64,000 bases of DNA, taken from Styela clava (lineage: Eukaryota). The position numbers and the translations under genes were made by a program. Below the pieces are notes generated by a model. That model saw nothing but the letters and a program-made list of their open reading frames with translations, was not told where the DNA came from and did not search any database. The stretch lies in NCBI RefSeq assembly GCF_964204865.1, contig NC_135259.1, positions 15,128,001-15,192,000 of the forward strand, read 5' to 3'. Shown one piece after another: positions 545 to 63,114 of the stretch (its first letter is position 1; every line of letters starts with the position of its first letter).

Positions 545-998
545 TCAGACAAACATGAAATTATCATGAACGCACATATATCCGTCAATGTCCGATATTT
601 CTACAAAAAGTTGTTTCTTCAATAAAATGACAAAAAATTATTTTAATTCAACAATATTATTATGTTACCTCGTTGTTCTGGCTGATCTACAATTGATCTT
701 TTTCGCTTTCCTTTCCACCCCGGAGTAGCCATTCTGAGCGCGAACGATCATAAATAATTTGAAAGTGGCTTTGATTTTCGGTATACCACACTTATTTATA
801 CCTCTTGCTCCGAACAAAACACCATGCAATCAACCACTCATATCTCACTTTTATTTGGAAGAGCCAGAATTTTTGAGGTTCTACATTGCCTGCCCAATTT
901 TTACACTTTGGATGGGATGGGGTCATGGAATTTGAATCCGAGATGTGTGATCTACGACGCCCACAGAGCAAAGTATAAAGCTTTAACCGCAAGGCCAT
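545..998 (-). CDS. Peptide precursor gene A (core MATPGWK-G-KRKR); exon 1 uncertain, possibly degenerate
   Basis: Exon 2 733-669 (cag|A...G|gtaac) = (R)MATPGWKGKRKRSIVDQPEQR, with family phases 2/1. Probable exon 3 600-545 = EISDIDGYMCVHDNFMFV*. Candidate exon 1 998-802 ends SKR|gtataa in phase 2 but lacks a clean signal peptide. Confidence 0.55.
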
Positions 999-1630
999 CG
1001 CGCTGCACAAGATTTAATACGTAATCTTGATGACTTGAAGAAGTACTCATTATGGAATCATTACCAATAGGTCATTTCAAATTCAATTTGGAAAATTATG
1101 TTAAATACCGCCATTATCCAAATCACTCATTCATAATTGCATCATGAAAGCATTAGGCCTTTAGAAGTTAATGGATACGAAATTTATAAATTGAAACTGC
1201 ACTACTTCAAAAATCATTTGGAAGTTTGAGCCTCTTTATGCTACGATCGCAGTTTTTTGTGATATGGGGTTTGTTCTGTTGTAGGATTATTTCTTTCTTT
1301 TTAATGGGATACGTGATGAATAATTCAGATTAGATTACCACTGTTAAATTAGTATATTTCGTAGGGTCGGTACCACTGTTAAAAAGAATGGGACCCCATT
1401 CCGTTTCCATCAAGATAAACTGTAATTTCATACTTTTGAATCCTTTTCCGAATAGCAGATATATAATTTACTTAGCTGTCCTACGAGAATGCGATTGTTT
1501 ATAACTTTGTGAGCGAATAATGAGCGATCTTTTCTCAAAATAAGGCGTGTTTAAAATCATTTATAATACAATTTCAAATTCTATTTTTGCTAAACAGCGT
1601 TTTAGGAGTAAAGTTAGCATTGAAGCATAC

Positions 1631-2168
1631 ATGGCTGCGAGGATATGGATTTTCGTTTTGGCGATGTGCGTTGCAGTATTGTTAGGACCTCAAAAAGGCA
1701 AGGCAGAAGATTCATTTCCTGGACCAGAATCAAGGTAATTTACTAAAAAAATATTTTAAAATCTCCAAATGTTGATTCCTGTTTCTTAGTTTTCGAGAAA
1801 ATCCGAATCTCAATGCAATTTGAACGATTGTTTTTTTTTTTCTCAATCGGATTCATCATCCGTTGTTTCAATTGTTGATGATTTAATTAAGAATACCAGG
1901 CGGAGAAGTGCCATGGAGTGGAAAAAAGAAAAGATCTGTTAAAGATGATTTGAATGATATAGGTGAGACTTTTATTAATGTTTATGTTGTATTTTTGCTG
2001 ATACTGAAAAGAGATGCAGGAGTAGCCCAACTGCATGTGAAGCAGATACTCGCGCATACTTTTGACAGACTTTGTATATGAATTTTGCTTTAAATAAGTC
2101 ACTTTTTTTCCAAACATGTGTTTTCTGTTTCAGATATGGATATTATTCTGTTTGGTGATATTGATTAA
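1631..2168 (+). CDS. Secreted peptide precursor gene B (predicted IPGGEVPWS-amide)
   Basis: Exons 1631-1734, 1892-1962, 2134-2168 (GT-AG, phases 2/1): MAARIWIFVLAMCVAVLLGPQKGKAEDSFPGPESR|IPGGEVPWSGKKKRSVKDDLNDI|DMDIILFGDID*. AATAAA at 2325. Confidence 0.85.
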
Positions 2169-4131: not shown

Positions 4132-5073
4132 TTACTCGAGAACCTCCGCCTCTATAAAAAGAGCGATATCTGTAAGAAAAAAAGTGATACATTCAATTAA
4201 TAGTGAAGTGGAAAGAATAAGATTTTAAAATTTGTCAACATGGCAGTGCAAAATATATTCGATAAACCTAAAATAATTAGCTTACCGGCTACAATTAATC
4301 AAATTTTGTTTATAAAAAAGTAGATTTAATTTAAAATTTGTCTCTCTTTTTCTATTAATTCAATAGAATATCCAATACCATTTTAATAAATTGATATTGG
4401 AACTTTTTAGGAAGCCTGTGCACCACTGTAAATACTTAATTCCAAATTCTCAATAGTTTCCTCAATGTTTAGCATTATTGCGCAATAGAAGACTTGGGAC
4501 ACATACTATTTTTTTTAACAAAGTGGTTTATATAAAGCTTATGTGGAATTCTCCATTGCCAACAAAGCAAAAATACAATTAGATCTTCCTTTGTAAAATG
4601 ACCCAGCAGGAATGTATAAAAGTAATTTTGCACGCGCCTGAATTTTCATCATTGTCTACTGTGGATCTCCTTTTCTTTTTTCCAAGCCACGCCGGGGCTA
4701 CTGGGTGTCTAAAATGCAATTTTTTATTATTATATGAACATATTGTTGCAATATATTACATAGTTTGATTTCATTTCATCAAAAAAAATACCAGAAATTA
4801 CAAAGTTTGTCATTATGAATCATCTATTTGCTGACATCTATTGAAACCAGAAAAAGTTGAGACAAACTATGAAAACTTGAACTATAAAACTTATTTAAAA
4901 TGTGGATAGAATGCAATGTAAATTGGTTGATACTTCCCGAAAAAATCGAAAAATCACCACCTTGAATAAACTATGCCATGAACAGCCGACTCTCCATCCT
5001 TGTCATTGCAATTGGTGATGTGGATGAACATAAAGCAATAAAGTACACAGATGAAAAAAAGTTCTACTTTCAT
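4132..5073 (-). CDS. Secreted peptide precursor gene C (predicted HPVAPAWL-amide)
   Basis: Exons 5073-4961, 4708-4638 (GC donor), 4169-4132: MKVELFFICVLYCFMFIHITNCNDKDGESAVHGIVYSR|HPVAPAWLGKKKRRSTVDNDENS|DIALFIEAEVLE*. Confidence 0.82.
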
Positions 5074-7325: not shown

Positions 7326-7481
7326 TCAGAAACGCATCCAAATCCAGTCAACACATTCCTTGTCTTGTATGAAGACAAAAAACCTCATAAAAATAATTTG
7401 CCTGAAATCGACATAAATTGAACTTCTTGTGTATATTACAGTATAAATTTTTCTGAGCATCTCCAAGATTAGAAAACTAAG

Positions 7482-8225
7482 ATGAAGAATATCGCAATTT
7501 TTCTTGCTGTAGTCATGTTAGTTCTTAGCCAGGACATTTCTCCAGTTGAATGTCGGACATTGAAGATCAGTTCACCAATACGGTAAGTCAATTAGATTTC
7601 TGTTATATTTAGCTGGTTGAGTTAATGACGTTCTCCATTTCTTTGGGTCTCGGCTACTTTGAACAGTTGATATAGTTTCACAAATTATTCATTGCAAAAG
7701 GAATCCTGGGTGATAATTAATGAGATTCAAATATAAATTTTCTTCATCGAGAAATCGAAAACCCATAAAGTTTGCCATAGTTTAAGCACCATTATACCAA
7801 CCTCATCGTGTATTAAGTGATTCAGTTGAAAGTCGTTTATTTTACATTTTGCAGGTTAAGCACACAGCCACCATTCTACGCATGGGAACGGAAAAAGCGC
7901 AGTGTGGAAACTGATGTAAATTTGCAGATAAAAGGTGATGACATTTTAATTGATATTGTTAGACTTGGAAGTCTAAGTTTTATTTTAAAAAAATTCTTCA
8001 AGGCACTATTATGTAAATTTTTCGAAAGTACAAGTTATGGCTGAAAGAGTTCTCAGTTCTGATCAAGAAAATATTATGATCGTATCTCCAACGTTCAAAA
8101 TCTGAAGCTCAGCGTACTATGTCGTGGAAATCTCCATTCTCGATAATATTATCTTGTAAGTTTAAACACATTCACCTTTTGTTACAGAAAGAGAGAACAC
8201 GGTCATTGGACAAGCAAAAGGTTAA
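7482..8225 (+). CDS. Secreted peptide precursor gene D (predicted LSTQPPFYAWE)
   Basis: Exons 7482-7582, 7855-7934, 8188-8225: MKNIAIFLAVVMLVLSQDISPVECRTLKISSPIR|LSTQPPFYAWERKKRSVETDVNLQIK|ERENTVIGQAKG*. Confidence 0.87.
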
Positions 8226-10994: not shown

Positions 10995-12396
10995 ATGAAG
11001 ACCGTCGCAATTTTTCTTGTTGTAGTTGTGCTGGTTAGCCTGGAAATTTCCCCAACTGACTGTCAGATATTGATGATCAGTTCACCGGTACAGGGGAGGT
11101 AAGTTTATTAGATTTCTGTTATTGAAGACGAATTGTACATATGGATTGTTTTGGTATTATGTTGTTGTTGTTCTAGTTAGTGTTTCTTTTCTTGTTGCTG
11201 TTAACTATTGGACCAATTGCTTTGAAATTTTCTACTGGTAAAAATTGTATCGTTCGCTAGAAGGCTCATTACTTTCATCTGTTTCATAAATTTCTGTAGG
11301 CTCTAAGTGATTCGTTTTTTTATGTTTGGTGAAATCATCAAAATTAAATATTGAGCACTTGTGGCAGTTCTTTGTTCGTGTTAGTAGTCAGGCGAAGTCA
11401 TTAATACTGTGGGATAGGTGGTCTACTGCGAAAGATTGCATATTCATACTACTCTGGTTTCGCCCTCGTGTACCTACATTTGAGCATTGCTCTCTTACTT
11501 TCTATAGAAGATCGGATTGAAGTTTTGAATGTTTGCACTCTATCCTCTCATGCTCTGTATTTAAACATTCGATATAATTTCACAAATTCTGAATTGTTTA
11601 TTCAGGGTGATAAATGATGATTTTCAAAAGTTTTCTTCGCCGATCGTTCGACGATGGAAATTTATCATATTTTAATTTACCATTATATATACATTACACT
11701 TTATACGAATTGATAAACTCATTCACACAAGTAGATTAATTGATATAACTTTGTTAACAAAGTACACCAGTGGTTCCAACTAGGGTTCCGAGTAACCCAA
11801 GGGTTACGCTAGTTCCGTCCAGGGATTCCACAAGTTTAAATCCAAATCCTAGAGTCTGTATGGTGTACGTATATTGTTTGTCTATAATCAATACGCGACT
11901 ATGAGATAATCATATAATAAGTGTGTTTCACTATTGTTCGGTGAAAGATCGCCAGACGTTCCGCGTCAAATCGTCGTTTCACATTTTATGATTATAAATA
12001 TAAGCATATTTAGATATAATCAATTTCACGGGAATTTCTCGAGTTTTTGAAATGTTTGTTGGTGTAAAAACACTGCTCTACATCAACTTTACGTTTTCTA
12101 TATTTCAGATATACCACACATGCACCATCTGTATGGAAACGGAAAAAGCGGAATGTCGAAAAGGATGAAAATTTGCAGACTGAAGGTGAAATATAGCAAA
12201 ATTGTTAATTAATGTTACACTTGAAAGTGAATTTATCTTTAAAAACAAATTCAAATCGAGTCAAAGCCGTGGCTTCAACATTTCAAAACCTGAAGCTCAG
12301 TATTAATCTGTGGGAAGCTTCATTCCCGTCAATGTTATCATGTAAGTTTAAACATCTCCACCTTTTATTACAGAAAGAGAGAAGGATTTATTTTGA
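10995..12396 (+). CDS. Secreted peptide precursor gene E (predicted YTTHAPSVW)
   Basis: Exons 10995-11098, 12109-12185, 12374-12396: MKTVAIFLVVVVLVSLEISPTDCQILMISSPVQGR|YTTHAPSVWKRKKRNVEKDENLQTE|EREKDLF*. Confidence 0.85.
11768..12075. mobile_element. hAT-like MITE in intron 1 of gene E
   Basis: CAGTGGTTCC...AAACACTG termini and gggttcc subterminal motifs. TSD not clean. Confidence 0.5.
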
Positions 12397-14103: not shown

Positions 14104-14818
14104 TTATTGAACATCTTCGAAAAGCTCAAAATCTGAAAAATAGGAAAATAATTTCAATTACTGGTATTATACAAAGAAAAACACTAAGCTGATTATTACT
14201 AGAAATAGAGTTTAAGCACAATGCGTGACATTTAAGCTATTATATTTTTAGATTATGCGATACTACAGGCGAAGTGTGATAAAATACATACGCCGCCACA
14301 CTCTTACAAAGAATATGATTTGCATATAAAATAGAAAATATAATTGAATTGCATTGATTAAAACGTGTGGTCCAAAACCAATGTATACCACAATATTGAA
14401 CGTGCCTGTATTTTCATCAATTTCAACTATTGATCTTCTTTTCTTTTTCCCCGCCCACCCCGGATCTGACGCCGACGGTTGTCTGAAGTGAAAAACATAA
14501 CATGTTGGCAACAAATTTATTATTTTCGTTTAAATTAGAGTGTAAAAGTGAGAAATGTGCAATAATTTATTTTCTCACTTTTTTGAATTGTTGAAGCAGT
14601 TTTACTTAACAGTTTCAATATTACATTTGTTATATATTATACAAAATATTCATTTACCTAACTTAATTGATGAAATAATTTATGTAAAAATTAAAAAATC
14701 ACCTTGACTCCGATTTACCGCTGCCAGGCTGACCCATAAAAATCATGTCCGCGCAAATAATGACTTGTACGAAAATGGAGCAATAAATGGCACACATGAG
14801 AACAAGTTTCAGATTCAT
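14104..14818 (-). CDS. Secreted peptide precursor gene F (predicted pQPSASDPGWA-amide)
   Basis: Exons 14818-14703, 14482-14406 (CAG|gcacgt GC donor), 14132-14104: MNLKLVLMCAIYCSIFVQVIICADMIFMGQPGSGKSESR|QPSASDPGWAGKKKRRSIVEIDENT|DFELFEDVQ*. Confidence 0.85.
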
Positions 14819-16209: not shown

Positions 16210-17036
16210 ATGTTCACCAATAAATGCAAAATGATGACTTTAGTGTTTGGGGCGATGCTTCTGCTGAACTTGTCATTCATTTCGGAGAAGTCATCAATGG
16301 TGGTTGCTCAATCATCAACAACAGTGAACCCAACGGGTCAAAGGAGGTAAGAAACTTTTTTCTAAAATCTAAACAAGTAATCGTAGACGATGTTGATGTA
16401 CCGAGATGATGTAACCGAACGTAATTGTTTCAAACGGAGTCTTTATCATGTATACAGGATCAACAAAACAACATGAAAGTCCTATTCCCACTATATTTCT
16501 ATTGAAAACAAGAATAGAGATAGGTAATAAACCACGATAAGCTTGTGATGATGTGTTTTAACAACCTCCGTCAACCACGTTTCGGTCAGATACATAGAAC
16601 ACTTTTATTTACTCATATTATCACAGATATTCAACCCCGTGGGGTGGAAAGAAACGATCAGTGGGGACGGACGAATTTTTCGGTAAGTTTTACGAAAACA
16701 TTCAAACCTTTTTCGTGGTTTTGTAGCAAACGAATTTACTGAAGTCCATATTTGACACACATAATGAAATAAATATAATTGTATTGGCTAAAATCAGACA
16801 GAATCCAAACGTATTTATTTGGTTAACACACACTAATGGCAATGATTGTGCTCCAAAGTAAAATAATTTTTTGAGGTTATAGATCTGGTCTCTACGTGAT
16901 ATTCCTAATTGTATTGAATTAAAATCAATCAAACATCAGCGTAAAAGTGTATTGAGTTATAAAGTTGACTAAATTATTTTTATTCCTTTTTATCTTAGAT
17001 GGCATCCAACTACTTGACGAAAACCACTTAGATTGA
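16210..17036 (+). CDS. Secreted peptide precursor gene G (predicted YSTPWG-amide)
   Basis: Exons 16210-16346, 16627-16682, 16999-17036: MFTNKCKMMTLVFGAMLLLNLSFISEKSSMVVAQSSTTVNPTGQRR|YSTPWGGKKRSVGTDEFF|DGIQLLDENHLD*. The core is flanked by RR and GKKR. Confidence 0.87.
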
Positions 17037-19084: not shown

Positions 19085-19787
19085 TCAATCTTCATCAAAT
19101 AAAAAGTTCTCAACTGAAAAAAAATGATCGATTTTATTTTTTTTAAAATTCTTTAGCTTGCTACTACGGCAATGCCTGGAGTTGCTGAATTCTACGCGTA
19201 ACGCTGTAGACGCAGGCAATTGAAGTAGAAAAAATATATATATATATCGTTGAATCGTACATAATTTATCATTCCCAAAAATATCTAAAATTTGTCATTT
19301 GTTAGCTCACCTTCAGCAGCAAAATCTTCTGCAATTGATCTTTTCTTGCTGCCACCCCATGGTGGACTCGGAGTACCTATTCTGTAGAATGTATTTGTCA
19401 CACATATAAAATTTTTCCAAAAAGTAATAATTCAATATAAATCAGATTAGGTCAAATGAAGCATCTTTTTACAATTTGTTGCGATGAAATACGCATTGTC
19501 CCTTTTAACTCGAAAAAAATTTGAATTGGCCAAGTGTAATCCCCAATGATATTTTAGTTAGCACTCTAAATTTGCACACTCAACATCTACTCTTCGCGAT
19601 ATCGAGCGAATTCTAAACCGAAAAGTTAATTTTATTTGGTGTTGAATGTTTGTAAAAGAGATTTTATTTATATTAGTATAAAATGTACAAACCTTCCTTG
19701 GTCAGGCGGAACTGCTTCTACACAATGATCTGAGACGACAAAAAATCCAAACATGAGCACAAAGCATAGACATGTTAACATCTTCAT
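19085..19787 (-). CDS. Secreted peptide precursor gene I (predicted IGTPSPPWGGS)
   Basis: Exons 19787-19693, 19381-19311, 19113-19085: MKMLTCLCFVLMFGFFVVSDHCVEAVPPDQGR|IGTPSPPWGGSKKRSIAEDFAAE|VENFLFDED*. Confidence 0.87.
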
Positions 19788-21861: not shown

Positions 21862-22780
21862 ATGAAGAATATCGCAATTTTTCTTGCTGTAGCTGTGTTA
21901 GTTCTTAGCCAGGACATTTCGTCCGTTGAATGTCGGACATTGATGATCAGTTCACCGATACAACATCGGTAAGTCTTTTAGATTTCTAATATTTTGTATA
22001 GCTGATAGAATATAAGAGTTTATAGGTTCTCCATCTCTTTATGTCTCTCCTACTTCTATCTTTTGATATATTTACAAATTCTTCATTGTATAATGGTATA
22101 CTGGGTAATAATGAGATTTAAATAAATATCTTCCTCTTCGATGAATCGAAAACACAAATTTACCTAATTACCGTTATACCAACATTATCATGGATTAAGC
22201 GATTCAATTAATTGAGTGATTAGTTGAAAGTAGTTTCTATAGCAACCTTTTGTTTTACATTTTCCAGATATAGCACAATACCACCATTCTACGCATATAT
22301 ACTGAAAAAGCGCAATGTGGAAAATGATGTGAATTTGCAGACGAGAGGTGACGACATTTTTGATTGTTGTTAGAAATTCTAAATTAATTTTTTTTTATTA
22401 AAATAAAATTTCACTGAGGTAATATAAGTTTTATTTCAGTCAAACAAGCGACGAAACGCGACCAAGTCGGATTAATAGTTTTATTTTTGCCCGAGATGCT
22501 CCCAATCTTAGTTCCAATACTTTGTGAGAGCCATACACCTATTCACTTAAGGCATCACGAGGTGAATTATTTGAAAGTGAAAGTTATGACTCGAAAAGGT
22601 CTCAGTTTTTAATCGAGAGTATCTTGAGGTTGCAGCTTCAACGTTTGAAACCTCAAGCTCAGTACTAAGTTGTAGGAATCTCCATTGTCGTGAATATTAT
22701 CTTGTAAGTTAAAACATCTCTACCTTTTTTTTACAGAAAGAGAGAACATGATCATTGGACAAGCAAAAAATGAAGTATGA
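21862..22780 (+). CDS. Secreted peptide precursor gene J (predicted YSTIPPFYAYIL)
   Basis: Exons 21862-21968, 22268-22347, 22737-22780: MKNIAIFLAVAVLVLSQDISSVECRTLMISSPIQHR|YSTIPPFYAYILKKRNVENDVNLQTR|ERENMIIGQAKNEV*. Confidence 0.87.
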
Positions 22781-24382: not shown

Positions 24383-25225
24383 ATGAAAAATATTGCAATT
24401 TTTCTTGCTGTGGTCATGTTAGTTCTTAGCCAGGACATTTCGCCCGTTGAAAGTCGGACATTGATGATCAGTTCACCGATACAAGACCGGTAAGTCTATT
24501 AGATTTCTGTTATTTTGTATAGCTGATAGAATATAAATGGTTATATGTTCTCCATCTCTTTATGCCTTGCCTACTCCTATTTTTTGATATATTACCAATT
24601 CTTCATTGTATAATGGTTACCATTATACCAACCTCATCATGGATTAAGCGATTCAGTTAATTGAGTGATTATTTGAAAGTAGTTTCCATAGCGACATATC
24701 GTTTTTCATTTTCCAGATATAGCACAATACCACCGTTCTACGCATACAAACTGAAAAAGCGCAATGTGGAAAATGATGTGAATTTGCAGACGAGAGGTGA
24801 CGACATTTTTGATTGATGTTAGAAATTCTAAATTAATTTTACTTCAAAATAAAATTTCATTGAGGTAATATAAGTTTTATTTTAGTCAAACAATCGACGA
24901 AAAGCGACCAAGTTGGATTAATAATTTCATATTTGCCCGAGATGAACCCAATCTTAGTTCCAATACTTTCTAAGAGCCATACACCTATTTCTTTGTGGCA
25001 ACACGAGGTGAATTAATTGAAAGTAAAAGTTATGACTCAAAAAGGTCTCAGTTTTGAATCGAGAGTATATTGAGCATGCAGCTTCAACGTTTAAGACCTC
25101 AAGCTCAGTACTAAGTTGTCGGAAACTCCATTATCGTGAATATTATCTTGTAAGTTAAAACATCTCTACCTTTTTTTACAGAAAGAGAGAACATGATAAT
25201 TGGACAAGCAAAAAATGAGGTATGA
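24383..25225 (+). CDS. Secreted peptide precursor gene K (predicted YSTIPPFYAYKL)
   Basis: Exons 24383-24489, 24717-24796, 25182-25225: MKNIAIFLAVVMLVLSQDISPVESRTLMISSPIQDR|YSTIPPFYAYKLKKRNVENDVNLQTR|ERENMIIGQAKNEV*. Confidence 0.87.
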
Positions 25226-27353: not shown

Positions 27354-28198
27354 TCATACTTCATTTTTTGCTTGTCCAATGATCGTGTTCTCTCTTTCTG
27401 TAAAAAAAGGTAGATATGTTTTAACTTACAAGATAATATTCACGATAATGGAGTTTCCGACAACTTAGTACTGAGCTTGAGGTCTTAAACGTTGAAGCTG
27501 CATGCTCAATATACTCTCGATTCAAAACTGAGACCTTTTTGAGTCATATCTTTTAATTTCAATTAATTCACCTCGTGTTGCCACAAAGAAATAGGTGTAT
27601 GGCTCTCAGAAAGTATTGGAACTAAGATTGGGTTCATCTCGGGCAAATATGAAATTATTAATCCAACTTGGTCGCTTTTCGTCGATTGTTTGACTAAAAT
27701 AAAACTTATATTACCTCAATGAAATTTTATTTTGAAGTAAAATTAATTTAGAATTTCTAACATCAATCAAAAATGTCGTCACCTCTCGTCTGCAAATTCA
27801 CATCATTTTCCACATTGCGCTTTTTCAGTTTGTATACGTAGAACGGTGGTATTGTGCTATATCTGGAAAATGAAAAACGATATGTCGCTATGGAAACTAC
27901 TTTCAACTAATCACTCAATTAACTGAATCGCTTAATCCATATGATGATGTTGGTATAATGGTAACCATTATACAATGAAGAATTGGTAATATATCAAAAA
28001 ATAGGAGTGGGCAAGGCATAAAGAGATGGAGAACATATAACCATTTATATTCTATCAGCTATACAAAATAACAGAAATCTAATAGACTTACCGGTCTTGT
28101 ATCGGTGAACTGATCATCAATGTCCGACTTTCAACGGGCGAAATGTCCTGGCTAAGAACTAACAAGACCACAGCAAAAAAAATTGCAATATTTTTCAT
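27354..28198 (-). CDS. Secreted peptide precursor gene L (predicted YSTIPPFYVYKL)
   Basis: Exons 28198-28092, 27862-27783, 27397-27354: MKNIAIFFAVVLLVLSQDISPVESRTLMISSPIQDR|YSTIPPFYVYKLKKRNVENDVNLQTR|ERENTIIGQAKNEV*. Confidence 0.87.
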
Positions 28199-52096: not shown

Positions 52097-55065
52097 CCGA
52101 AGGACTAAGTTGTATATACTTATCGCTTTGTGTAAAAACTTTCACTTGAATCGTTTTTTATTTCAATTTTTAAATTTTCACGTCATTGGACGCAAAATGG
52201 ACGTGTCCTTTGTCCTGTCCGATATCCATTTTGTTATTATGCTATTGTTGTAGTTGGAATTCTTCTTTTTGTTGTGAAAAAAAAATCGCGTTTCTCATTA
52301 ACTACAAGACCAATTGCTTTTGCTTTGATTAGTTTCAAAGACTTGTGTGGTCTTTATGGAATTATTCATTCCAAAATTTTTAACTCTTAACTATATGCAC
52401 ATATATACTTGAGTTTTTACACCAACTTCATCTTGCAGTCAAGCGAAAAATTACAGCTTATAATTAGAGAAAAATAAATTAAATTTTTTAAAATTTTTGA
52501 TAAAAAAAAAACACACTTCTCTTATTTTTAACATCCATAAAACAGTATTCATCAAAAAATAAATGAAGAATCTAATTATATTGCAAAACTTCCACGCCAG
52601 AAGGACCAAATAATATATACTTATGAGAAATGCTTCGCGTCAGCATCTTTGTTTTGAATTGTTTTTTATTTCAATTTTGGAACTTCATTTTATTGGACAC
52701 GAAATGAACCTATAATTGCTTTCTTTTTCATGTTATTGTAACGTTATTGTTGGTGTAATTTCACTTTTTGTCGCTTTTCTCTATCTATGGAACCAATTGC
52801 TTTGAATTTTGCAGTGGGTAAAGATCGTTGTCCTCTAATTAATTTAAAAAACTTTTGTGGGCTCTATGGATTGTATTTTTTTTCATTCCAAAAAAAAAAA
52901 AAAAAATGCGTCAGTCTGCTGATACTGTACGATTATGATGCTATTTCATTTTGGCTTTCGTGTCCATATATTGGAGCATTGATCTTTTGTTTTTATAAGA
53001 GCAAGCAAGGCCATGCGCACCGACTCAGGAGTAAAGGAATCTGACCTCGATACATTGTACGAGTTAAAAATAAAATCTCCGCTTAGCAAATCTTACGATG
53101 GAAATATTGGAATATTACGGAATCTGCAACGTAGAGTGTTCTATTCACTGAAAACATCACAAAGATAGAAACTATATTCATCAAATAAACAGTCGCAGGT
53201 TCAATTATTATTCGTTTTCAGTGTACGTAACTAATCAGTAGAGTAAATCCACATCTTGCAATCAAACTTGATTCTAAAAATATAAAAAATATGATTTGTC
53301 TCAATATTATTCCGCATGATGCAAATGTATTTGGTGTACTTGCTTCTGAATCTACTTATTTTGGGGATTGCACCCAATACAGCATTCCACTTTTTATATG
53401 TATATATTCGCTTTTAACAAACTTTGAAGTCAAAGAGATTACAAAAAAATTAGTCTTAAGTGACCACTAACTGTATGCAAAAAAAAAAAAAAAAAATTAT
53501 TTTTTAAAGGCACAAGTTGATATGGTATCACAAGAAGAATATTTTTTCGTCTGGAACAATTATGAAAAACGCAAAATGATAAATCGCTGATAAGAACACA
53601 CTTCGGATTGAGAGTGCGCTACCGGTAAAGTTTTCTCGGATAGGATACGGTCGACAAAAAATTTAACTTACCCTTACCGGTATTTTTACGCAGGAACGTA
53701 GCAAAGTTGAAAATGTGTAATATTAGGCTGTGATTAAAGAGCATTGTTTCTGCACATATACTAAAACAAAAACACTCACTTGATCCCGTTGATTGCACCT
53801 CGGACGTAATTTTGGTAATGCGTACTCAATTCTGTACTTGAATGCACTGGAAAATGGAACCGTTCTAGACCAATGTAGTTGTACTTCGCTGATTGAAATT
53901 ATTGAGAAGATTTTAATAATATATCTGTCTTAAGGCTACCATAATAACAGAAACAAGAGAGCAATTTCCAAATATATGTACACGTTAACCAGAGCGAAGC
54001 AATGCTTACCTTTACCGCTACCGGTACCCTCCAAAAATTTCCGAGTTACTCGTGGCAAGAATTTACAGTATCTAACTGGACAGCCAGAGTTCCCATGTAT
54101 AAAATAATACAGCGAAATTTTGGACGAAATATCAGATTTCATACGAAATTTAGACATAAAGAAAAGTAATAGCCTTCTGGTAAAAAAAATCAATCTTTAA
54201 CCACTGAAAATTTTAAAGCCATTGTCCAAGTATTCGAAGAGAGAAGCTATTTTTAATGATAATGATGACGAATAACAAGAACAACAACAACATAATATCG
54301 AAACAATCGCTATGTCCATGAGCGTGTCCAAAAACAAAGACATTGTAAGAAAGGTAAGGTTTGTTTTTTCGTCCGGGTGTCAACGGATCGTGGAAGTACT
54401 ACATCGAGTTACTCGTGGCGTCAAATTTAATACCCATTCGAAAACCGATGTTCTTTTCTTTAGCTACTGGACTAAACGCTTTCGAAATATCAGATGTTGA
54501 ATATAGTGTCATCCTCTAAAAAAAATTACTTTCCTTTTTACATAAATCATCAGGACTTGCTGTGCTCATTGTAACACCACATATTGTTTTAAGTTGAACT
54601 ACGGCGTGGTTTTTCCGATGAGCCAATTTTCCGAGCAAGTATTAAAAATAGTGAGACAAAAATAGAACAATATAACAGAGTTGAACGATGATTTAGCAAA
54701 ACTTTCCACAGGTTTATTTATGTTCAATAGGCTACTGAGATGATAACTTTTATTTAGTTACAATAGCTTACTTTCATTGCATATTGCATTAAATGTTTCG
54801 TTTTATCATATGAAAGAGAGACCGCTTTCTTTACGCCAGGCATCGTTATAAATATCAACTTTTTTACGGTATTCAAAACTTCGCGAAGAGCCTGAGGACC
54901 AAAAATAAAATGGCAAGTTGTTATCAAAATTACCTTGACAGCGAACGTTCATTATGATTATTATAATATAAAATTAATGATATCGTGGTAAGGACATTCT
55001 CTAAAGTCTAAACTATACATTGTCAGTAATCATAATTACATACCAATCAGTTCTTATTGGTGACA

Positions 55066-55202
55066 GCACATTTGAACCCACGTACATTTGCACCCGCAAA
55101 CTGCACCCAAGACATTTGAACCTCTATACTATTGCATCCACCGACATTTGAACCACGAACATTTGCACCTCGGACATTTACATCCCGGACATTTGAACCC
55201 AC
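55066..55202. repeat. Tandem ~15-bp repeat (gacatttg[a/c]acc...)
   Basis: About 8-9 degenerate units adjoining the inner inverted-repeat arm. Typical of TE subterminal repeats. Confidence 0.75.
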
Positions 55203-58200
55203 GAGAGAAAAGCGACAAAAAGTGAAATTACACCAACAATAACATGAAAAAGAAAGCAATTATAGGTACATTTCGTGTCCAATAAAATGAAGTTCCAAAA
55301 TTGAAATAAAAAACTATTTAAAACAAAGATGCTGACGCAAAGCATTTCTCATAGGTATATACTATTTGGTCCTTCTGGCGTGGAAGTTTTGCAATATAAT
55401 TAGATTCTTCATTTATTTTTCGATGAATACTGTTTTATGGATGTTAAAAATGAGAGAAGTGTGTTTTGTTTATTAAAAACTTTGAAAACTAATTTATTTT
55501 TCTCTAATTATAAGCTGTAATTTTTCGCTTGACTGCAAGATGAAGTTGTTGTAAAAACTCAAATATATATTTGCATATAGTTAAGAGTTAAAAATTTTGG
55601 AATGAATAATTCCATAAAGACCACACAAGTCTTTGAAACTAATCAAAGCAAAAGCAATTGGTCGTGTAGTTAAGTTAAACGCGATTTTTTTTTCACAACA
55701 AAAAGAAGAATTCGAACTACAACAATAGCATAATAACAAAATGGATATCGGACAGGACAAAGGACACGTCCATTTTGAGTCCAATGAAGTGAAAATTTAA
55801 AAATTAAAATAAAAAACGATTCAAGTGAAAGTTTTTACACAATACGATAAGTATATACAACTTAGTCCTTCGGGCGTGGAAGTTTTGTAGTGTGATTAGG
55901 TTCTTTATTTAATTTTTGATCAATAATGTTTTATGAATTTTGAAAATGTATTTTTTTTTTTTCTTCAAAAGCTTTAAAAAGTAATTTATTTCTTTTATAG
56001 TAATGAACTGTAATTTTTCGCTTGTTTAGAAAATGAAGTTGGTGTAAAAACTAAGGTATATATTTGCTGATAGTTATAAGGAAAAGTCAAAATTTACCAA
56101 TTTTTTATTGTCAGTGTAATCGTTGATAAAATCTATAAATTTGTTGTATTTCGCTGATGGGATGGGACAGGCATAATTTCTATGGGATGGGAATGGGACA
56201 GAAAAATGTGTTCCATGGACAAGCCTGAATATCAGAGCTTGCTTGAAAGTCGAATCGTTTGCATAAAATACGCAGTAAGATCAAGACCGCGTTCTCCCTA
56301 TATTCTCGCATGATTGCTAAAATTGATTGTTTGCATCTTTCCAAAGTATGTTTTATTTCTTTCTATTTTTTTTTTTTTTTTTTTTTGGTATACATCCAAA
56401 TCATCATGCAGACAACTCGGTCTTTCTATACAGAAATATTCTAATACATAGAGCTCCTTTTCGTAGAAAACAACTCGTGCTATTGAGTCACTGCTTGTTG
56501 GAAGTTTGCTTTCATATTAAACTTATATAGCAATATTTACATATATCTATGGATATAACCTTCAAAATACTGTCGCAATCTCAGCAAAAATTACAACCGA
56601 ATTCTAAAAGAATTGTACGAATGTTATATGAAAGCGTGCTGTGAATAATAAAAAACCCAAATTGGGTTGAGAGCATCGAAGGAATTCCTAAAAATAAAAG
56701 AATGGCTTCTAGAAAACTCCTTACATCTTACTATAAATCTGAACTCGAAATGAAAATATTGGATCTTATAGGTTGATTCTCCAATCTCGGCCTCCTCTTG
56801 AACATTCCGAATGCTTGAGACTTTGATATACAGAATATATTATGCGAAAAATAATATTCCAATGCGCAGATTTTTGATACCAATGCATAGATTTATTTAC
56901 TCGAAAATAGGCCACATAGGTTGAACTCAAAATGTACATTTTCACCCACTGTCAATAGAAATGTAGTGATTGTTCAGATTCGCTATATAAATGTTTGCTG
57001 ACGTTTTGCTGATGTCAACAACAAACAATAAAAATTTGAAACACCATCTAAATTCTAAGATGACCATTGAAGTTTCGAAAGGATTGTTCTTGTTCATGGT
57101 TAAAGCAGTACGTGGAGCGTGGAACGAAAAAACTCCACCCACATTTCAGCTTAGTAGGAAATGAAATAATTGAAAGTAATGGCTACCTACGCTGCGTGAG
57201 TCATAACAACAGATATATAGTTATTATTTCAATACCTTATAAAGATTTGTAAAAATATTTATTTTTAAACTCGTACTTTTTGTCAGGCGTATACTAGAAA
57301 TTAGTGAGATGAATTTTAAGGCATTCCAGGCAAGCTTGTTTCATATCTAGTGTTAGTCAAAATATAAGTATTCCAAAATTGATTTAGATATATTTGGGTG
57401 AAGGATTTGATAGGAGAAGCTGATATATATCGCAGCCGATATATATATATTTTCATTATTGGGGGGTTGTGTTTCGAAATTTAGAGGGTGGTAAATATTT
57501 TGCCAAAAGCGATGAAACTATTTGCAACTTATAAAAATGTGTTATGTATATGACAGACCATCTACTCTACACTGATAAATATGTCATTTTCTGAATATTC
57601 AAAGACAATTTTACCGAAGTTAGGTATTGAAGTCTGGCATCACATCTGGGGAATGTAGGGAAATCACTAGGGTTGCCTATTTGGGAAGCTAAAGAACATA
57701 AACGAAAGCTGTCAATGATAAAAGCTAATCAAATAAATCATATCTTATTCACTTCTAATACGAGGAAGAACAATCTACTTGCGAGCATTGATATGAGGAA
57801 CACAGTCATGTTTCGCTGACGTATAATACTCACATATACGTACTGACAAACGTGATATTAATGAAATCCAAATTTCAAAATGCAAGTAGTGTGGGTACAT
57901 GTACTCGAAATGCTGATTGCATTCGCAAATTATCAAAAACAACAGTAAAGTCTGTGAAAAAAATCTCTGTGGTAAATAATACGTCGAACTATCGATTTCT
58001 TGTAAAATTTAAAAAAATAAAAAAAATTTAAAAAAATAAAATAAAATTTTCAAAATCAAAAATAAACCGAAAATAAAAAAGTAATGAAAAATAAAAACAA
58101 CTGTAAAAATACAAATCAAAATATAAAAAAATGAAAATTAAAAAACGCGCTAAAAATAAAAATGGCGTTTTTCAATTATTTTGACATACGTCGATCAGTA

Positions 58201-59428
58201 AACATACGTTTTACGAATTTAATTATGTCAACTCAGTTGTCAATTTTCTACTAAAGTCAGTACATCATATTATTCATGTAATTCTATCTTTTAATCCATC
58301 CGGTTATGGCGTTTTTCAATTATTTTGACATATGTCGATCAGTAAACATACGCAAAACCATAAACTTAATGACTAACACACGGTTGACGCACAGAACAAC
58401 GGTATCCCCTGATACCGGAAACAATATTACATAACAACTTCCCACGCACCACCATCGACCAACGTATTGACCAACATTCGACCAACATTTGTGTGTTGAA
58501 TTCGACATCATATACTACTATGTCCTCACTTGGTTTATAGTCACTTTGGGTACACGTGAATCGAAGTGCAAAGTGAATATAATATAGTCAAGTCATACGG
58601 TAGTCGCTTTGGTGGGAATGAATATGCCGATTTAAATTATTACGACATAAACACACCTCATTGCCATCAGCGATGCGTGGAAAAGTCACGTTTCACCTAC
58701 CGGTACCTAACTGCTCGCTACTCTAGGCCAGCCTAATTACTAATTTTCAGCAACTACCTTCTGAACAGAGGGCCACGAGCTAGCAATGTGTGGATAAACA
58801 TGATCATTCAAGTTTCTTTCGATATAAACGTGTTATTTTAATGTTTGTCATAACTAATTATTTTTTCCACAAAACCGTTAGCGTGCCACGTCTGAGGGCA
58901 TGGCGTGCCAAATTTGGCACGCGTGCCACGTGTTGTGCACCCCTGACCTAGAGGCTAGAACGCTATGACTTCAACTATGTTTCATCGCAAATCAAATATC
59001 TCGGACGCAATCCCCATTTCCCTCACTTATCTTGTGGTGCAATAAATTGTGTAGGCAATTTGCAACAACAGCCATTGCGCTCCTTGCAGAAAATAGTAGC
59101 TCGTGTCAGTGAAAACTATGACTGAGCGTCTTCGGACTAAAATGCGTGAAAACGACGTATGAAATCGCAAACCGTGTTAGGCATTTTGTACTATTGGCAA
59201 GAAATTGGGTTTAACATTTTCTGATGGCAGTGATGAGCATATTTATTACGAATATATCACATGGCCACAAAATTGCTTCACTTATACTAAAACTCAATGT
59301 TTTTCTGTCTACCCGATTTACCTCATGCCTAATGCCCAATAGACCAAACAATATTACGGTCAATTTATGCAATATATATATATATATTAATTAGAATTCC
59401 GTCATGACATTTGAATCCGATCGTTCAT

Positions 59429-60341
59429 TCATACTTCATTTTTTGCTTGTCCAATGATCATGTTCTCTCTTTCTGTAAAAAAAAAGATAGAGATGTTTTA
59501 ACTTACAAGATAATATTTACGATAATGGAGATTCCTACAACTTAGTACTGAGCTTGAGGTTTCAAACGTTGAAGCTGCAACCTCAATATACTCTCGATCA
59601 AAAACTGAGACCTTTTCGGGTCATACCTTTTACTTTCAAATAATTCACTTCGTGATGCCTTAAAGAAATAGGTGTATGGCTCTCACAAAGTATTGGAACT
59701 AAGATTGGGTGCATCTCGGGCAAAAATGAAACTATTAATCCGACTTGGTCGCTTTTCGTCGCTTGTTTGACTGAAATAAAACTTATATTATCTCAATAAA
59801 ATTTTATTTTAAAGAAAAATTAATTTAGAATTTCTAACATCAATCAAAAATGTCGTCACCTCTCGTCTGCAAATTCACATCATTTTCCACATTGCGCTTT
59901 TTCAGTTTATATACATGGAATGGTGGTATTGTGCTATATCTGAGAAATGTAAAACAAAAGGTTGTTATAGAAACTACTTTCAACTAATAACTCAATTAAC
60001 TGAATCGAATAATGATGAAGTTGCTATAATGGTAATCAAGTAAATTTGTGTTTTGATTCATCGATGGAGAATATTTTTATTTAAATCTCATTATTACCCA
60101 GTATACCATTATATCATAAAGAATTTGTGCAATTATATCAAAAGTTAGAGGTAGGCGAGGCATAAAGACATGAAGAACATATGACCCTTCAATTCTATCA
60201 GCTATACAAAATAACAAAAATCTAATAGACTTACCGGTCTTGTATCGGTGAACTGATCATCAATGTCCGACATTCAACGGACGAAGTGTCCTGGCTAAGA
60301 ACAAACACAACTACAGCAAGAAAAATTGCGATATTCTTCAT
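59429..60341 (-). CDS. Secreted peptide precursor gene Q (predicted YSTIPPFHVYKL)
   Basis: Exons 60341-60235, 59939-59860, 59472-59429: MKNIAIFLAVVVFVLSQDTSSVECRTLMISSPIQDR|YSTIPPFHVYKLKKRNVENDVNLQTR|ERENMIIGQAKNEV*. Confidence 0.87.
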
Positions 60342-62169
60342 CTTAGTTTACGACGCTTAGTTAAACTGGACTTCAGTTGATTTATTTTTATGAGGTTGTT
60401 TTGTCCAAACAAGTCCTTTCACAAGTAACCAAATTTCTTCCTGTTTAATGAAGCTGAAAGCTCAATTTTTTGGGAATGCGTTGTTGGATTAGTTTCTGGA
60501 GTGATTTATATACGGCATTGTTAATCAATTATTTAAAAAAATCGCGGTAATTGCAGCAATCTCGAAACGAATTCATCAAAAAGTTCAAATTTTTCATCGA
60601 ACTTTTTGATATGAAATCAATCCGTCTCCTCAGATATAAAGGCCTTAATTGCTCGTGCAATCATAATAATTTTTTAAAGTATGAATTTGTTCATTAGCAC
60701 AAACACTTGTTCCGAATTCTGATATTCAAAGTAGTGAACGAAAGCAATCATTTTGCCTTGTCAATGAAAATCAAAACTTAAATGACGTTCCGCTTTGAAG
60801 TAGAATATTGGATATCGATAATTTATATTTGCAAATGGTTGTCACTAAATTTGAATATTATCCTTTGAATTGATATTAATACAACGTTTTATTTCGAGTC
60901 AAATACACTAAGGTTAGTGTTTTGCTCTACACTGGACAAAAAAGTTTACCACTTGGGTAAAACCTAAACCCAGTTAACAATAATTAATTCGAATAAAAAA
61001 AACTTTCATATTATCAGTTTTAGATTATCAATTTTGTGCATACAAAAAATCACATTTGACCAAATGCCATTACTGAATAATTGCATTCATTATTTCGAAT
61101 TTTATACTACGTTTTCAGTATCGACTTCACTGGTCTACGGTGTTTGTTATTTGGCTACTTTTATTGCATTCGATTCAGTAGTTTTATGCCTACCAAGTCA
61201 ATACATATTTTTACTCCTAATTAAATATTGAGTTCTAGCATTAACAAGAAACTCTTATTCGTAGGTTTCATAATATCAAAACTGTTAGAACAGGCCAATT
61301 CATATACTTTGGCTCAAGAAGCAGAAACAAAAAAAGCAAAATTGAAGTTCAACCAAGATTCAATACCAATATCATTTCAGAAATATAATATCAGCATCAA
61401 TATCTACTATATTTTATTAACATTAAATTACTTCACCCACCCGTGCATTAAATGCCTCTGCCTAAGTTAAAGGTAAATTTGGAATTTTGCAATTAAACAA
61501 ATAATGGTAATGATCTCGATCATCCTACTAAAACGAAAACAAACTGATATGGACATTTTGAATATCTCAAGTGGCGGAAACCATAATACTTATGTCTGAT
61601 TAGTCGCAAAAGATCGTGAAGGAGTTTATTCAATTTAAACTCGAGCACCCAACGAAAATGATTATTCAAAATGTTTGTCGCAGCGAAAAGTAAATTGCTT
61701 TGTAGTTATTTTTAGTTCAAAAGTTAAAAAATTTATGTTTGTGACTTGTGAAGGAGTCTTGCTGTAATATGACTTATTGTTCATACCCAAGGAAACATTT
61801 CATGAAAATCATAATCAGCTTTCGGTCGGTTCACAATTTGGGTATTGTAATCATAGTGTCGAAATTGCCCTATACTGCTGTATCAAACGGCAGTCACAGC
61901 TCACGAGCATCATCTTATGGCAACCTGATTAACGAAAACATCTTGAGCTTCAGAAAAAGACATCAATTCAATTACTTGTTCTCAACAGAATAATTGTTAT
62001 GCAATAATTAATTTTTCGATCCTCAAGTAGTAAATGCAGAAGCAGTTGCTAAGGATGAATCTCCCCTCAGGCAATCAGTAAAAAGATATAAATTACTCCA
62101 AGTCAAAGCAGAAAATACACTCATAATCGAAGACTCTCATCTTGTTTACGACTACGCAACGCGAAGAAA

Positions 62170-63114
62170 ATGAAACATTTGACGATTCGGTGTTTTGTGT
62201 TATTGTCTTTTATGCTTCTGATGTCTTACAACATTGTTCATACTCAACTGACTACGGAAGGACCTATACAATCAAGGTATGAGTATTCCATAATCATATG
62301 TCCAAGTGCAATTGCTTCGCATACTTGTTTGCGCTACTGTAAAAGTCTGAATATTGTATTTTAACACACATTTGGGTTTGAACGTCCTAGATTGAATTGA
62401 ATGCAACATGATAGAAGGAAATTATCTGTGATCAATTTGATTGGTGAATAAATATATATATAACATCGTTGATTTTTGGAGAATTTTACTATTCAAAGGT
62501 CATGCGATTGTATGCAGATGATATTGCATTATTTCAATCCAAATTATCTTTATCAATCAAGAATTGAGTACATATGTTTTATTTATTCAATGTAAATATT
62601 TAAATATTTTAAATTGAATTTATCTTATTTCTGCTATATGTAACTATGGAAAATTTCTTTGAGGTGAAACAGCTTTCATGATAAACATGTAGGCCTATCC
62701 AATACGTAAGTCCAGACAAACGAAGATTAATTGATTCTCCATCTAAATATTTTTTAATTTCTCATTTTTAGGCTAGGCAACACCCCACCGTGGCCAGGAA
62801 AGAAGAAACGGGACGTTGGAAAATTTGATAAAATAACAGGTTTGTTAGTAGAAATTAGTAAGAGTTTGCAGAAATAAAAGCAAGACCCAATATAAAAGTC
62901 AAATAACATTAAATCAAAAACGTAATATACCGCATTATTTAGAGCCTTTTCAGATATCGTACCATTTATCATGCATCCTCTCCTAAAACAAAAAATAATA
63001 ACTCGTGTATTCCAATACTTTTTAACATACAAATATTTACACGTTATCTAATAAACTTTTTTTTGTACAGATGACGAATTATTCTTTGACGACGACTCAC
63101 AGATCGATCACTGA
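62170..63114 (+). CDS. Secreted peptide precursor gene R (predicted LGNTPPWP-amide)
   Basis: Exons 62170-62276, 62772-62839, 63071-63114: MKHLTIRCFVLLSFMLLMSYNIVHTQLTTEGPIQSR|LGNTPPWPGKKKRDVGKFDKIT|DDELFFDDDSQIDH*. Confidence 0.88.

What the first reader, a model, noticed from the sequence alone, without database searches (positions are those of the whole stretch)
545..63114. Hidden cluster of at least 17 micro-exon prepropeptide genes encoding a library of short Pro/Trp/Tyr-rich secreted peptides
Seen in sequence: 17 loci share one three-exon structure with identical intron phases (2 then 1), even where the DNA no longer aligns. The intact ones encode ~60-80 aa precursors: signal peptide, spacer, basic residue, 6-12 aa core, (G)KK(K)R, acidic tail. 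Established: basic clusters are prohormone-convertase sites, carboxypeptidase E trims them, Gly donates the amide (PAM), and N-terminal Gln cyclises to pGlu. Predicted products: MATPGWKa, IPGGEVPWSa, HPVAPAWLa, pQPSASDPGWAa, YSTPWGa, IGTPSPPWGGS, pQGNTPPWPa, LGNTPPWPa, LSTQPPFYAWE, YTTHAPSVW, YSTIPPFYAYIL/YAYKL/YVYKL/HVYKL. Inference: I cannot assign them to a known family. One peptide per gene and a large diversifying array suggest an undescribed hormone/neuropeptide, pheromone or defence-peptide system.
Basis: partly seen in the sequence, partly recalled or inferred. Interest (0 to 1): 0.95.

Follow-up and report, generated by a model that had tools for sequence, protein, structure and literature searches.

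The report
Sea-squirt cluster of tiny propeptide genes
A 100-kb stretch of the sea squirt Styela clava genome holds about 27 tandem copies (17 in this window) of a tiny three-exon gene, each apparently made to release one short proline/tryptophan-rich, mostly amidated secreted peptide; the family is real and at least partly expressed, has no relatives in any database searched, and its function is unknown.

Summary
Sixteen have an upstream Met and signal-peptide exon whose phase-2 donor builds an Arg codon (Lys in one gene) across the splice. Fifteen have the phase-1 GT donor.

For the IPGGEVPWS gene, RNA-like contigs from four runs in three studies skip both introns at exactly the predicted GT..AG sites.

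An exon-2 profile run against the whole 377-Mb genome gives 28 hits. Twenty-seven lie within one 100-kb interval, so the cluster extends beyond both ends of the window. It contains pseudogenes and fragments, which fits birth-and-death evolution.

"Hidden" is only partly right. RefSeq already models the YSTIPPF subfamily as "uncharacterized protein" (LOC120337617, LOC144428314). The expressed IPGGEVPWS gene matched no database protein.

No Pfam family, no paper and no homologue among 1.84 billion representative proteins turned up.

The shared signature is P-x-W-X-Gly-KKKR-S-[VI]-x-x-D, with Trp next to last before the amide. The closest look-alikes in form are frog-skin tryptophyllins (for example GMRPPWF-NH2), with no sign of homology.

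Processing, tissue and function remain inferred. My best guess is receptor-acting secreted signalling peptides.

The same stretch is also on the scan's index as s1-822864.

The parts
545..733 (-). g01, M-type pseudogene. Exon 2 is 733-669 (core MATPGWK + GKRKR) and exon 3 is 600-545. No signal exon.
   Evidence: The upstream sequence reads ATA where the intact relatives at window +76078 and +79539 have ATG, and similarity is lost after that. Not covered by RNA-like contigs.
1631..2168 (+). g02, E-type, intact and expressed. Exons 1631-1734, 1892-1962 and 2134-2168. Core IPGGEVPWS + GKKKR. 69-aa product.
   Evidence: for the model; contigs from 4 runs in 3 studies skip 1735-1891 and 1963-2133 at GT..AG, and the transcript runs from about 1596 to 2320; no matching protein in the database.
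4579..5073 (-). g03, D-type. Exon 1 is 5073-4961 and exon 2 starts at 4708. Core HPVAPAWL + GKKKRR. GC instead of GT at the family's second donor; the frame stays open to a stop at 4581-4579.
   Evidence: No RNA-like contig in the four runs laid.
7482..8225 (+). g04, A-type. Exons 7482-7582, 7855-7934 and 8188-8225. Core LSTQPPFYAWE + RKKR, with no Gly. 72 aa.
   Evidence: 72-78% DNA identity to the YSTIPPF genes.
10995..12396 (+). g05, A-type. Exons 10995-11098, 12109-12185 and 12374-12396. Core YTTHAPSVW + KRKKR. 67 aa. Intron 1 is 1010 nt.
14263..14818 (-). g06, D-type. Exon 1 is 14818-14703 and exon 2 starts at 14482. Core QPSASDPGWA + GKKKRR. GC at the second donor position; the frame stays open to a stop at 14265-14263.
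16231..17036 (+). g07, F-type. Exons 16231-16346, 16627-16682 and 16999-17036. Core YSTPWG + GKKR, preceded by RR. 69 aa.
19085..19787 (-). g08, C-type. Exons 19787-19693, 19381-19311 and 19113-19085. Core IGTPSPPWGGS + KKR. Tail VENFLFDED.
21862..22780 (+). g09, A-type. Exons 21862-21968, 22268-22347 and 22737-22780. Core YSTIPPFYAYIL + KKR. 76 aa.
   Evidence: Differs at two residues from RefSeq model P0004.
24383..25225 (+). g10, A-type. Exons 24383-24489, 24717-24796 and 25182-25225. Core YSTIPPFYAYKL + KKR.
27354..28198 (-). g11, A-type, a near-identical inverted copy of g10. Exons 28198-28092, 27862-27783 and 27397-27354. Core YSTIPPFYVYKL.
   Evidence: introns differ by about 1%.
30160..31100 (+). 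g12, B-type. Exons 30160-30266 and 30756-30823. Exon 3 is either 30939-30973 (proximal acceptor) or 31057-31100 (distal, acidic tail). Core QGNTPPWP + GKKKR. The split codon is Lys.
   Evidence: The choice of exon 3 is not resolved.
32658..33576 (-). g13, A-type, an inverted copy of g09 (97%). Exons 33576-33470, 33170-33091 and 32701-32658. Core YSTIPPFYAYIL.
35161..36059 (-). g14, A-type. Exons 36059-35953, 35657-35578 and 35204-35161. Core YSTIPPFHVYKL.
37886..38757 (+). g15, B-type. Exons 37886-37992, 38540-38607 and 38723-38757 (proximal). The distal exon-3 homologue at 38841 loses its stop. Core LGNTPPWP + GKKKR.
59429..60341 (-). g16, A-type. Exons 60341-60235, 59939-59860 and 59472-59429. 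Core YSTIPPFHVYKL. The product is identical to RefSeq XP_077973517.1 (LOC144428314 isoform X2).
   Evidence: compared with P0002.
62170..63114 (+). g17, B-type. Exons 62170-62276, 62772-62839 and 63071-63114 (distal, acidic tail DDELFFDDDSQIDH). Core LGNTPPWP + GKKKR.
40000..58600 (.). Transposon-rich spacer that splits the array between g15 and g16. It holds hAT transposase remnants and a Ulp1/SENP-like protease and is not part of the peptide family.

Best explanation
This is a lineage-restricted gene family in Styela clava, expanded in tandem and by inverted duplication. There are about 27 loci in roughly 100 kb of contig 13, 17 of them in this window, and several are pseudogenes or fragments. 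Each intact gene has three micro-exons and encodes a 67-76-aa secretory precursor. Exon 1 carries the signal peptide and a short spacer that usually has a Pro 4-6 residues before its end. The exon 1/2 junction assembles an Arg (or Lys) codon. Exon 2 carries one 6-12-residue core with a conserved Pro..Trp (Tyr in one subfamily), then usually Gly, then a KKKR-type cluster and S-[VI]-x-x-D. Exon 3 carries a short, mostly acidic-hydrophobic tail. The likely mechanism is inferred from the established prohormone pathway: entry into the ER, cutting by proprotein convertases at the basic sites, trimming of the basic residues, conversion of Gly to a C-terminal amide by a PAM-type enzyme, and cyclisation of N-terminal Gln to pGlu. 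That would give one short, nearly uncharged, protease-resistant peptide per gene, most of them ending in Trp-X-NH2. I think these most likely act as secreted signalling peptides on receptors, as neuropeptides or hormones do, and that gene turnover produces a set of related ligands. Shown here: gene structure, clustering, family unity, splicing and transcription of one member, an annotated match for another, and the lack of detectable homologues. Inferred: every processing step, the site of expression, and the function.
For: - Architecture and phases are shared by 16 of 17 loci (exon 1) and 15 of 17 loci (second donor).
- RNA-like contigs in 4 runs from 3 studies join the exons of g02 at exactly the predicted junctions.
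- The RefSeq model XP_077973517.1 equals my g16 product.
- The exon-2 alignment gives the consensus P-[PAG]-W-x-G-KKKR-S-[VI]-x-x-D, with the Lys-Arg that ends the basic cluster invariant.
- 27 of 28 genome-wide profile hits lie in one 100-kb interval.
- Leave-one-subfamily-out searches recover most of the omitted subfamilies directly after the training loci.
- In recent copies, nonsynonymous divergence (0.02-0.07) is mostly below intron divergence (0.01-0.14), so the genes are under some constraint.
- The genome carries proprotein-convertase P-domain loci and many copper type II monooxygenase loci with both domain halves.
- The predicted cores are 6-12 residues with a net charge of about -1 to +2, unlike membrane-active antimicrobial peptides (my own count).
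- The nearest eukaryotic clusters by language-model features are small prohormones (PDH, NPF, DH31, GnRH, UTS2B), but at 0.81-0.86 this is a lead only.
Against: - No peptide was observed, and no tissue or cell type is known.
- The N-terminal cut relies on a single Arg without the upstream basic residue that usually accompanies monobasic convertase sites. Only g07 has RR there.
- The A subfamily has lost the Gly and varies at its C-terminus (IL, KL, WE, W), so the amidated end is not universal.
- A 27-copy array with one peptide per gene, rapid birth and death, and no homologue outside the species is more typical of defence, toxin or pheromone peptides than of neuropeptides.
- Only one gene has direct RNA evidence here. 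g01 and g03 had none in the four runs laid.
- SignalP could not be run.
Confidence: 0.45

Rival explanations
1. The peptides are exocrine or haemocyte-derived defensive bioactive peptides, comparable to frog-skin tryptophyllins. They would be released into the tunic, blood or sea water and act on predators, foulers, microbes or the animal's own wound response, rather than on the animal's own hormone receptors.
For: The large tandem array has pseudogenes and inverted duplications. There is one peptide per small precursor. No homologue was found outside the species. The form closely matches type-2 tryptophyllins: GMRPPWF-NH2 comes from a 62-aa single-copy precursor and is myotropic at nM levels and weakly antimicrobial (PMC3947715), and compares with LGNTPPWP-NH2 here. 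The g02 contig has a fairly high word depth in one run, but the tool warns that depth is a poor measure of expression.
Against: The cores are short and almost uncharged, so direct membrane killing is unlikely. The core motif is conserved and shows no sign of diversifying selection. No tissue data exist.
Confidence: 0.3
2. The peptides are species- or mate-recognition signals or settlement pheromones released into sea water, acting for example on gametes, larvae or neighbouring animals.
For: The family is restricted to this lineage and turns over quickly, with many slightly different ligands. Expression differs between runs of the same study: shares of 0.13 against 0.00 in study P3.
Against: Nothing points to it directly. 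Known ascidian sperm attractants are not peptides (my own knowledge).
Confidence: 0.1
3. The small secreted proteins act whole, or through their acidic tails, or serve as substrates for further Trp/Tyr modification or cross-linking. In that case the predicted short amidated cores are not the active products.
For: The N-terminal lone-Arg site is atypical for convertases. The spacer has a conserved Pro and the tails share an acidic-hydrophobic pattern. From my own knowledge, S. clava makes heavily modified haemocyte peptides such as styelin D with bromo-Trp and DOPA.
Against: The KKKR cluster, the preceding Gly and the Pro..Trp core are the best-conserved columns, as expected if cutting there matters.
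Confidence: 0.1
4. These are transcribed but functionless young open reading frames, or annotation noise.
For: Several copies are broken. Some copy pairs have pN/pS near 1.
Against: Old, strongly diverged subfamilies still keep the signal exon, both intron phases, the Pro..Trp core, the basic cluster and an open frame. Most pN values lie below intron divergence.
Confidence: 0.05

Closest known systems
Amphibian skin tryptophyllins, especially type 2 such as AcT-2 (GMRPPWF-NH2; PMC3947715)
   Same: Both are short Pro-Trp peptides, often ending Pro-Pro-Trp-X-NH2. Each has a single copy in a 60-80-aa precursor with a signal peptide, basic cleavage sites and a Gly amide donor. Both form multigene families, and both have poorly understood biological roles.
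   Different: In frogs an acidic spacer precedes the peptide and the peptide sits at the C-terminus. Here the acidic part follows the peptide. No sequence homology was detected. The taxon and tissue differ. This is a resemblance of form, most likely convergent.
Canonical neuropeptide/prohormone precursors, including the species-specific Ciona neuropeptides (Ci-LF, Ci-YFV/L, Ci-NTLP; named from my own knowledge)
   Same: They share a signal peptide, basic-cluster processing sites, Gly-directed amidation, a possible N-terminal pGlu, and short products. Tunicates are known to have lineage-specific peptide families.
   Different: Those precursors usually carry several peptide copies and are one or two genes each. 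Here there is one peptide per gene and about 27 genes in one array. The N-terminal site is a lone Arg assembled by splicing. No homology to any Pfam hormone family was found.
Styela clava haemocyte antimicrobial peptide precursors (clavanins, styelins; from my own knowledge)
   Same: Same species. Both are small prepropeptides with a signal peptide, one mature peptide, in clavanins a Gly amide donor, and an anionic C-terminal extension.
   Different: Clavanins and styelins are cationic amphipathic peptides of 23-32 residues. The cores here are 6-12 residues, Pro-rich and nearly uncharged.

Membership tests
Prohormone-type secretory propeptide (a kind, not a homology family) | N-terminal signal peptide | tested here: met
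   16 of 17 loci have Met plus a 12-17-residue uncharged hydrophobic run at the start of exon 1. This is a heuristic check only; SignalP was not available.
Prohormone-type secretory propeptide (a kind, not a homology family) | Core flanked by basic convertase sites, with Gly before the C-terminal cluster for amidation | tested here: met
   The Lys-Arg that ends the C-terminal basic cluster is invariant, and Gly precedes the cluster in the E, D, F, B and M types but not in the A type or g08. The N-terminal site is a single Arg/Lys, with RR only in g07.
Prohormone-type secretory propeptide (a kind, not a homology family) | Mature peptide detected; expression in secretory, neural or endocrine cells | not testable with these tools
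   No peptidomic or tissue-labelled data were available. Run labels were coded.
Tryptophyllins (amphibian) | Short Pro/Trp peptide, single copy per small precursor | tested here: met
   compared with PMC3947715.
Tryptophyllins (amphibian) | Homologous precursor: conserved frog signal peptide, acidic spacer before the peptide, peptide at the C-terminus | tested here: not met
   The order of parts differs, with the acidic part after the peptide. The profile of P0001-P0005 found only itself among 1.84 billion representatives.
Wamide superfamily (MIP/allatostatin-B/GLWamide) | C-terminal Trp-amide; several copies per precursor | tested here: not met
   Trp is next to last (W-X-Gly-KKKR) in every amidated member, and there is one copy per gene.
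AKH/GnRH/corazonin superfamily | Peptide directly after the signal peptide with N-terminal pGlu; amidated; GnRH-type Pfam match | tested here: not met
   A spacer of roughly 10-20 residues separates the signal peptide from the core. Only g06 and g12 cores start with Gln. Pfam gave no family. The resemblance of a -PGW- stretch to these peptides comes from my memory only.
Neurotensin / Ci-NTLP-like | Conserved free C-terminal Pro-(Tyr/Ser/Gly)-Ile-Leu type ending | tested here: not met
   Only g09 and g13 end in -YIL. Close copies end in -YKL, and the older A members end in -WE or -W. The aligned aromatic residue corresponds to the family's Trp.

The most novel reading that the evidence does not exclude
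The array may be a styelid-specific library of about 20 Trp-X-amide ligands that arose as a new chordate peptide signalling or chemical-defence system. It could have matching receptor expansion, or its conserved Trp/Tyr could be enzymatically modified (bromination, hydroxylation), which would give the first gene-encoded precursors for part of the unusual modified-peptide chemistry of tunicate blood cells.
Probability: 0.12. Interest if true: 0.8.

Novelty: new variant of a known kind. Interest (0 to 1): 0.52.

Why it matters
Tunicates are the closest living relatives of vertebrates, and their peptide signalling has been mapped mainly in Ciona. An uncharacterised, species-restricted array of about 27 one-peptide genes with a clear shared signature (Pro..Trp-X-amide) gives a defined, cheap-to-synthesise set of candidate ligands. 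These can go into peptidomics, receptor deorphanisation and bioassays in an invasive fouling species. The array also shows how a ligand family can grow by local duplication while keeping the intron phases and a cleavage residue built by splicing. It shows too that genome annotation misses such genes: the expressed IPGGEVPWS gene matched no protein in the database searched. If the products turn out to be ordinary neuropeptides, the finding is a solid but modest addition. If they are defensive or modified peptides, it links genes to tunicate natural-product chemistry.

Tried and rejected
- Rfam and tRNA scans found nothing in the window.
- Pfam gave no family for the precursors.
- The profile search of 1.84 billion representatives returned only the query's own cluster.
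- The word-based search with the g02 exon-2 piece found nothing. The search with P0001 found only S. clava's own isoforms.
- Four paper searches found no description of the family: two on Styela clava with neuropeptide or peptidomic terms, one on six core motifs, and one on the LOC/XP identifiers. A fifth search on novel ascidian neuropeptides returned nothing relevant.
- A search for a promoter motif shared by the subfamilies gave only AT-rich words.
- I considered and rejected membership in the neurotensin-like, AKH/GnRH-like, Wamide and cationic antimicrobial-peptide groups, for the reasons in the membership table.
- I looked for positive selection on the core, but the counts are too small and pN/pS is 0.2-1.1.
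g01 and g03 were covered by no contig, which does not prove they are silent.
- I sent no joined (spliced) model to any search tool. Exons were searched by reference, and full-length searches used database proteins P0001-P0006. Spliced translations were made only inside local scripts for description.

Full report
**What the window is.** It is AT-rich animal DNA (31-37% GC) with no N. Earlier notes of this scan name the genome as the sea squirt Styela clava. I confirmed this independently: the database proteins identical or nearly identical to products of this window are NCBI and UniRef entries of Styela clava, TaxID 7725. The window is contig 13, 15128001-15192000, of a 377-Mb assembly.

**Checking the observation.**
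- A script then looked upstream of each piece for an ATG exon with a hydrophobic start and a phase-2 GT donor, and downstream for a phase-1 GT donor.
- Sixteen of 17 loci have the signal exon. Its last two bases (AG or CG, AA in one gene) plus the first base of exon 2 make Arg, or Lys in g12.
- Fifteen of 17 have the phase-1 GT donor. Third exons with short tails were found for the rest of the models.
- Products are 67-76 aa. The first exon always begins with Met followed by an uncharged run of 12-17 residues.
- Exceptions:
  - g01 (545-733, minus strand) has no signal exon. Where its intact relatives outside the window have ATG it reads ATA, and similarity ends there.
  - The two D-type genes g03 and g06 have GC instead of GT at the second donor position, with the frame staying open.
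  - The B type has two conserved candidate acceptors for exon 3.

**Transcription and splicing.**
They hold 13-43% of the sampled words, about the share expected if only exons are present. It also listed DNA-like runs holding 73-99%.
- I laid four of the RNA-like runs on window 1-6000. Each has one contig that covers 1596/1637/1673/1298-1731, 1889-1960 and 2132-2320.
- Each contig has two skips whose ends, allowing the stated shifts of 3 and 2 bases, are GT..AG introns at 1735-1891 and 1963-2133. These are exactly the predicted borders of g02.
- The runs are only guessed to be RNA, but a form lacking both introns in three studies is what a spliced message gives.
- g01 and g03 were not covered. 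This fits g01 being a pseudogene but proves nothing.

**Annotation status.**
- The exon-2 open piece of g09 found one database cluster, a 76-aa "uncharacterized protein LOC120337617" of S. clava.
- That cluster's five members include XP_077973517.1 (LOC144428314 isoform X2), which lies on a 22,500,630-base contig, the length of ours. Its sequence equals my g16 product.
- A 119-aa isoform retains intron 2.
- The exon-2 piece of the expressed g02 shared no words with any database protein.
- So "hidden" is right for some members and wrong for the YSTIPPF subfamily.

**One family, one cluster.**
- Aligning 18 exon-2 peptides by reference gives the consensus P-[PAG]-W-x-G-KKKR-S-[VI]-x-x-D. The Lys-Arg that ends the basic cluster is invariant.
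- The Trp is replaced by Tyr, with an FYA insertion, in the YSTIPPF genes.
- The Trp is therefore next to last before the amide donor. The products end in WS, WK, WL, WA, WG, WP or WE amide.
- Used as a profile against the whole genome, the alignment gives 28 hits. Twenty-seven fall in C13:15107506-15208030, 17 of them in the window, and one weak partial hit lies elsewhere.
- DNA searches with g09 and g02 likewise find copies only in this interval.
- I fetched 60 kb on each side. There I found further intact members (cores VPGGEAPWS, FPEGTPWSV, IATPRWE, MATAAWK, LGNTPPWP, LSTQPPFYAWE and a 96% copy of g02).
- I also found broken ones: an M-type copy with Trp changed to a stop, a D-type copy without an acceptor, an A-type signal exon with no exon 2, and an A-type copy without ATG.
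- In leave-one-subfamily-out profile searches over 8456 open pieces of the 184 kb, the omitted B, C, E and F members score E = 1e-5 to 5e-3. The omitted D members, g01, R-d, g04 and g05 rank 20-30, directly behind the training loci.
- The YSTIPPF genes rank lower (59-67), as does R-e (72). The YSTIPPF genes are tied to g04 and g05 by 72-78% DNA identity.
- The array grew by segmental duplication. A block of about 10 kb (138-8455) is repeated just left of the window at 93-98%. 34804-38019 is repeated at 59074-62299. 21289-23911 is inverted at 34149-31621.

**Constraint.** Among the six YSTIPPF genes and two B genes, nonsynonymous divergence is 0.02-0.07, synonymous divergence is 0.04-0.20, and intron divergence is 0.01-0.14. 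Counts are small. The picture is mild purifying selection, with a few pairs near neutrality and no evidence of diversifying selection on the core. Across old subfamilies nearly everything has diverged except the Pro..Trp core, the Gly-basic cluster and the S-[VI]-x-x-D that follows. This argues that the cut at that cluster and the core itself are what matters.

**Comparison with known families.**
- Pfam gives nothing for P0001 or P0002.
- A profile of P0001-P0005 against 1.84 billion representative proteins returns only itself.
- The word-based search with P0001 returns only S. clava isoforms.
- Language-model neighbours are bacterial hypotheticals and then small animal prohormones at scores of 0.81-0.86, below the level the tool treats as meaningful.
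- Paper searches for the species with neuropeptide or peptidomic terms, for six core motifs, and for the gene and protein identifiers found no description.
- In form, the nearest thing I could document is the frog-skin tryptophyllins. AcT-2 is GMRPPWF-NH2, made from a 62-aa precursor with a signal peptide, an acidic spacer, RR, one peptide copy and an amidation site, and it is myotropic at nM levels (PMC3947715).
- Compared with LGNTPPWP-NH2 the likeness is striking. But the order of parts differs, there is no detectable homology, and the animals are far apart, so I treat it as convergence.
- Wamides, AKH/GnRH-type peptides, neurotensin-like peptides and cationic antimicrobial peptides each fail a defining feature (see the membership table).

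**Mechanism.**
- The processing chain is established biochemistry applied by inference: signal peptidase, convertase, carboxypeptidase, amidating enzyme, glutaminyl cyclase.
- The genome has at least three convertase P-domain loci. It also has many copper type II monooxygenase loci, some with both halves adjacent, so the enzymes are plausibly present.
- The weakest step is the N-terminal cut at a lone Arg. It lacks the usual upstream basic residue. Most spacers do carry a Pro 4-6 residues before it, which may mark a site for another protease or may mean the real product is longer.
- The cores are short, Pro-rich and nearly uncharged. The motif is conserved rather than hypervariable.
- On that basis I rank receptor-acting signalling peptides first (0.45). 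An exocrine or haemocyte defensive secretion comes second (0.30), supported by copy number, turnover and species restriction.

**Limits.**
- Run labels were coded, so no tissue is known.
- No other tunicate genome could be searched with these tools, so "species-restricted" means "not found in the protein collections searched".

Noticed in passing
window 44539-46298 (-): Three adjacent open frames of a hAT-type transposase remnant. One matches the hAT dimerisation domain (E = 1e-6) and one weakly matches a Spin-doc-type zinc finger. They lie inside the 40-58.6 kb spacer that interrupts the peptide array.
   Followed up: partly
window 51142-52039 (-): Two open frames match the two halves of the Ulp1/SENP protease domain Peptidase_C48 (E = 6e-23 and 3e-8).
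   Followed up: partly
window about 880-1010: A stretch upstream of the g01 pseudogene looks by eye like a tRNA-derived SINE. ARAGORN calls no tRNA there. It may be part of what destroyed g01's first exon.
   Followed up: no
G000 C13:10.37-10.76 Mb and C5:9.09, 14.99-15.01, 17.89-17.96, 20.90-20.99 Mb: There are dozens of exon-level matches to both halves of the copper type II ascorbate-dependent monooxygenase fold (PHM/DBH-like), arranged in several tandem arrays. This looks like a large expansion of that enzyme family in this genome.
   Followed up: no
window 1298-1596 and 1388-1544: In run X1 the g02 contig extends about 330 bases upstream of the ATG and carries 10 base differences within 160 bases there, while the exons are identical. 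This could be a long 5' leader or an assembly join, together with high local polymorphism.
   Followed up: no
L003, about 7800-8700 (window -32187 to -31300): Exon pieces resembling a sugar-transporter (SLC2A-like) gene, including a GGILFGYDLGII stretch, lie left of the cluster. The gene could serve as a synteny anchor in other tunicates.
   Followed up: no
window 3697-3712: A run of about 14 C in otherwise AT-rich intergenic DNA.
   Followed up: no
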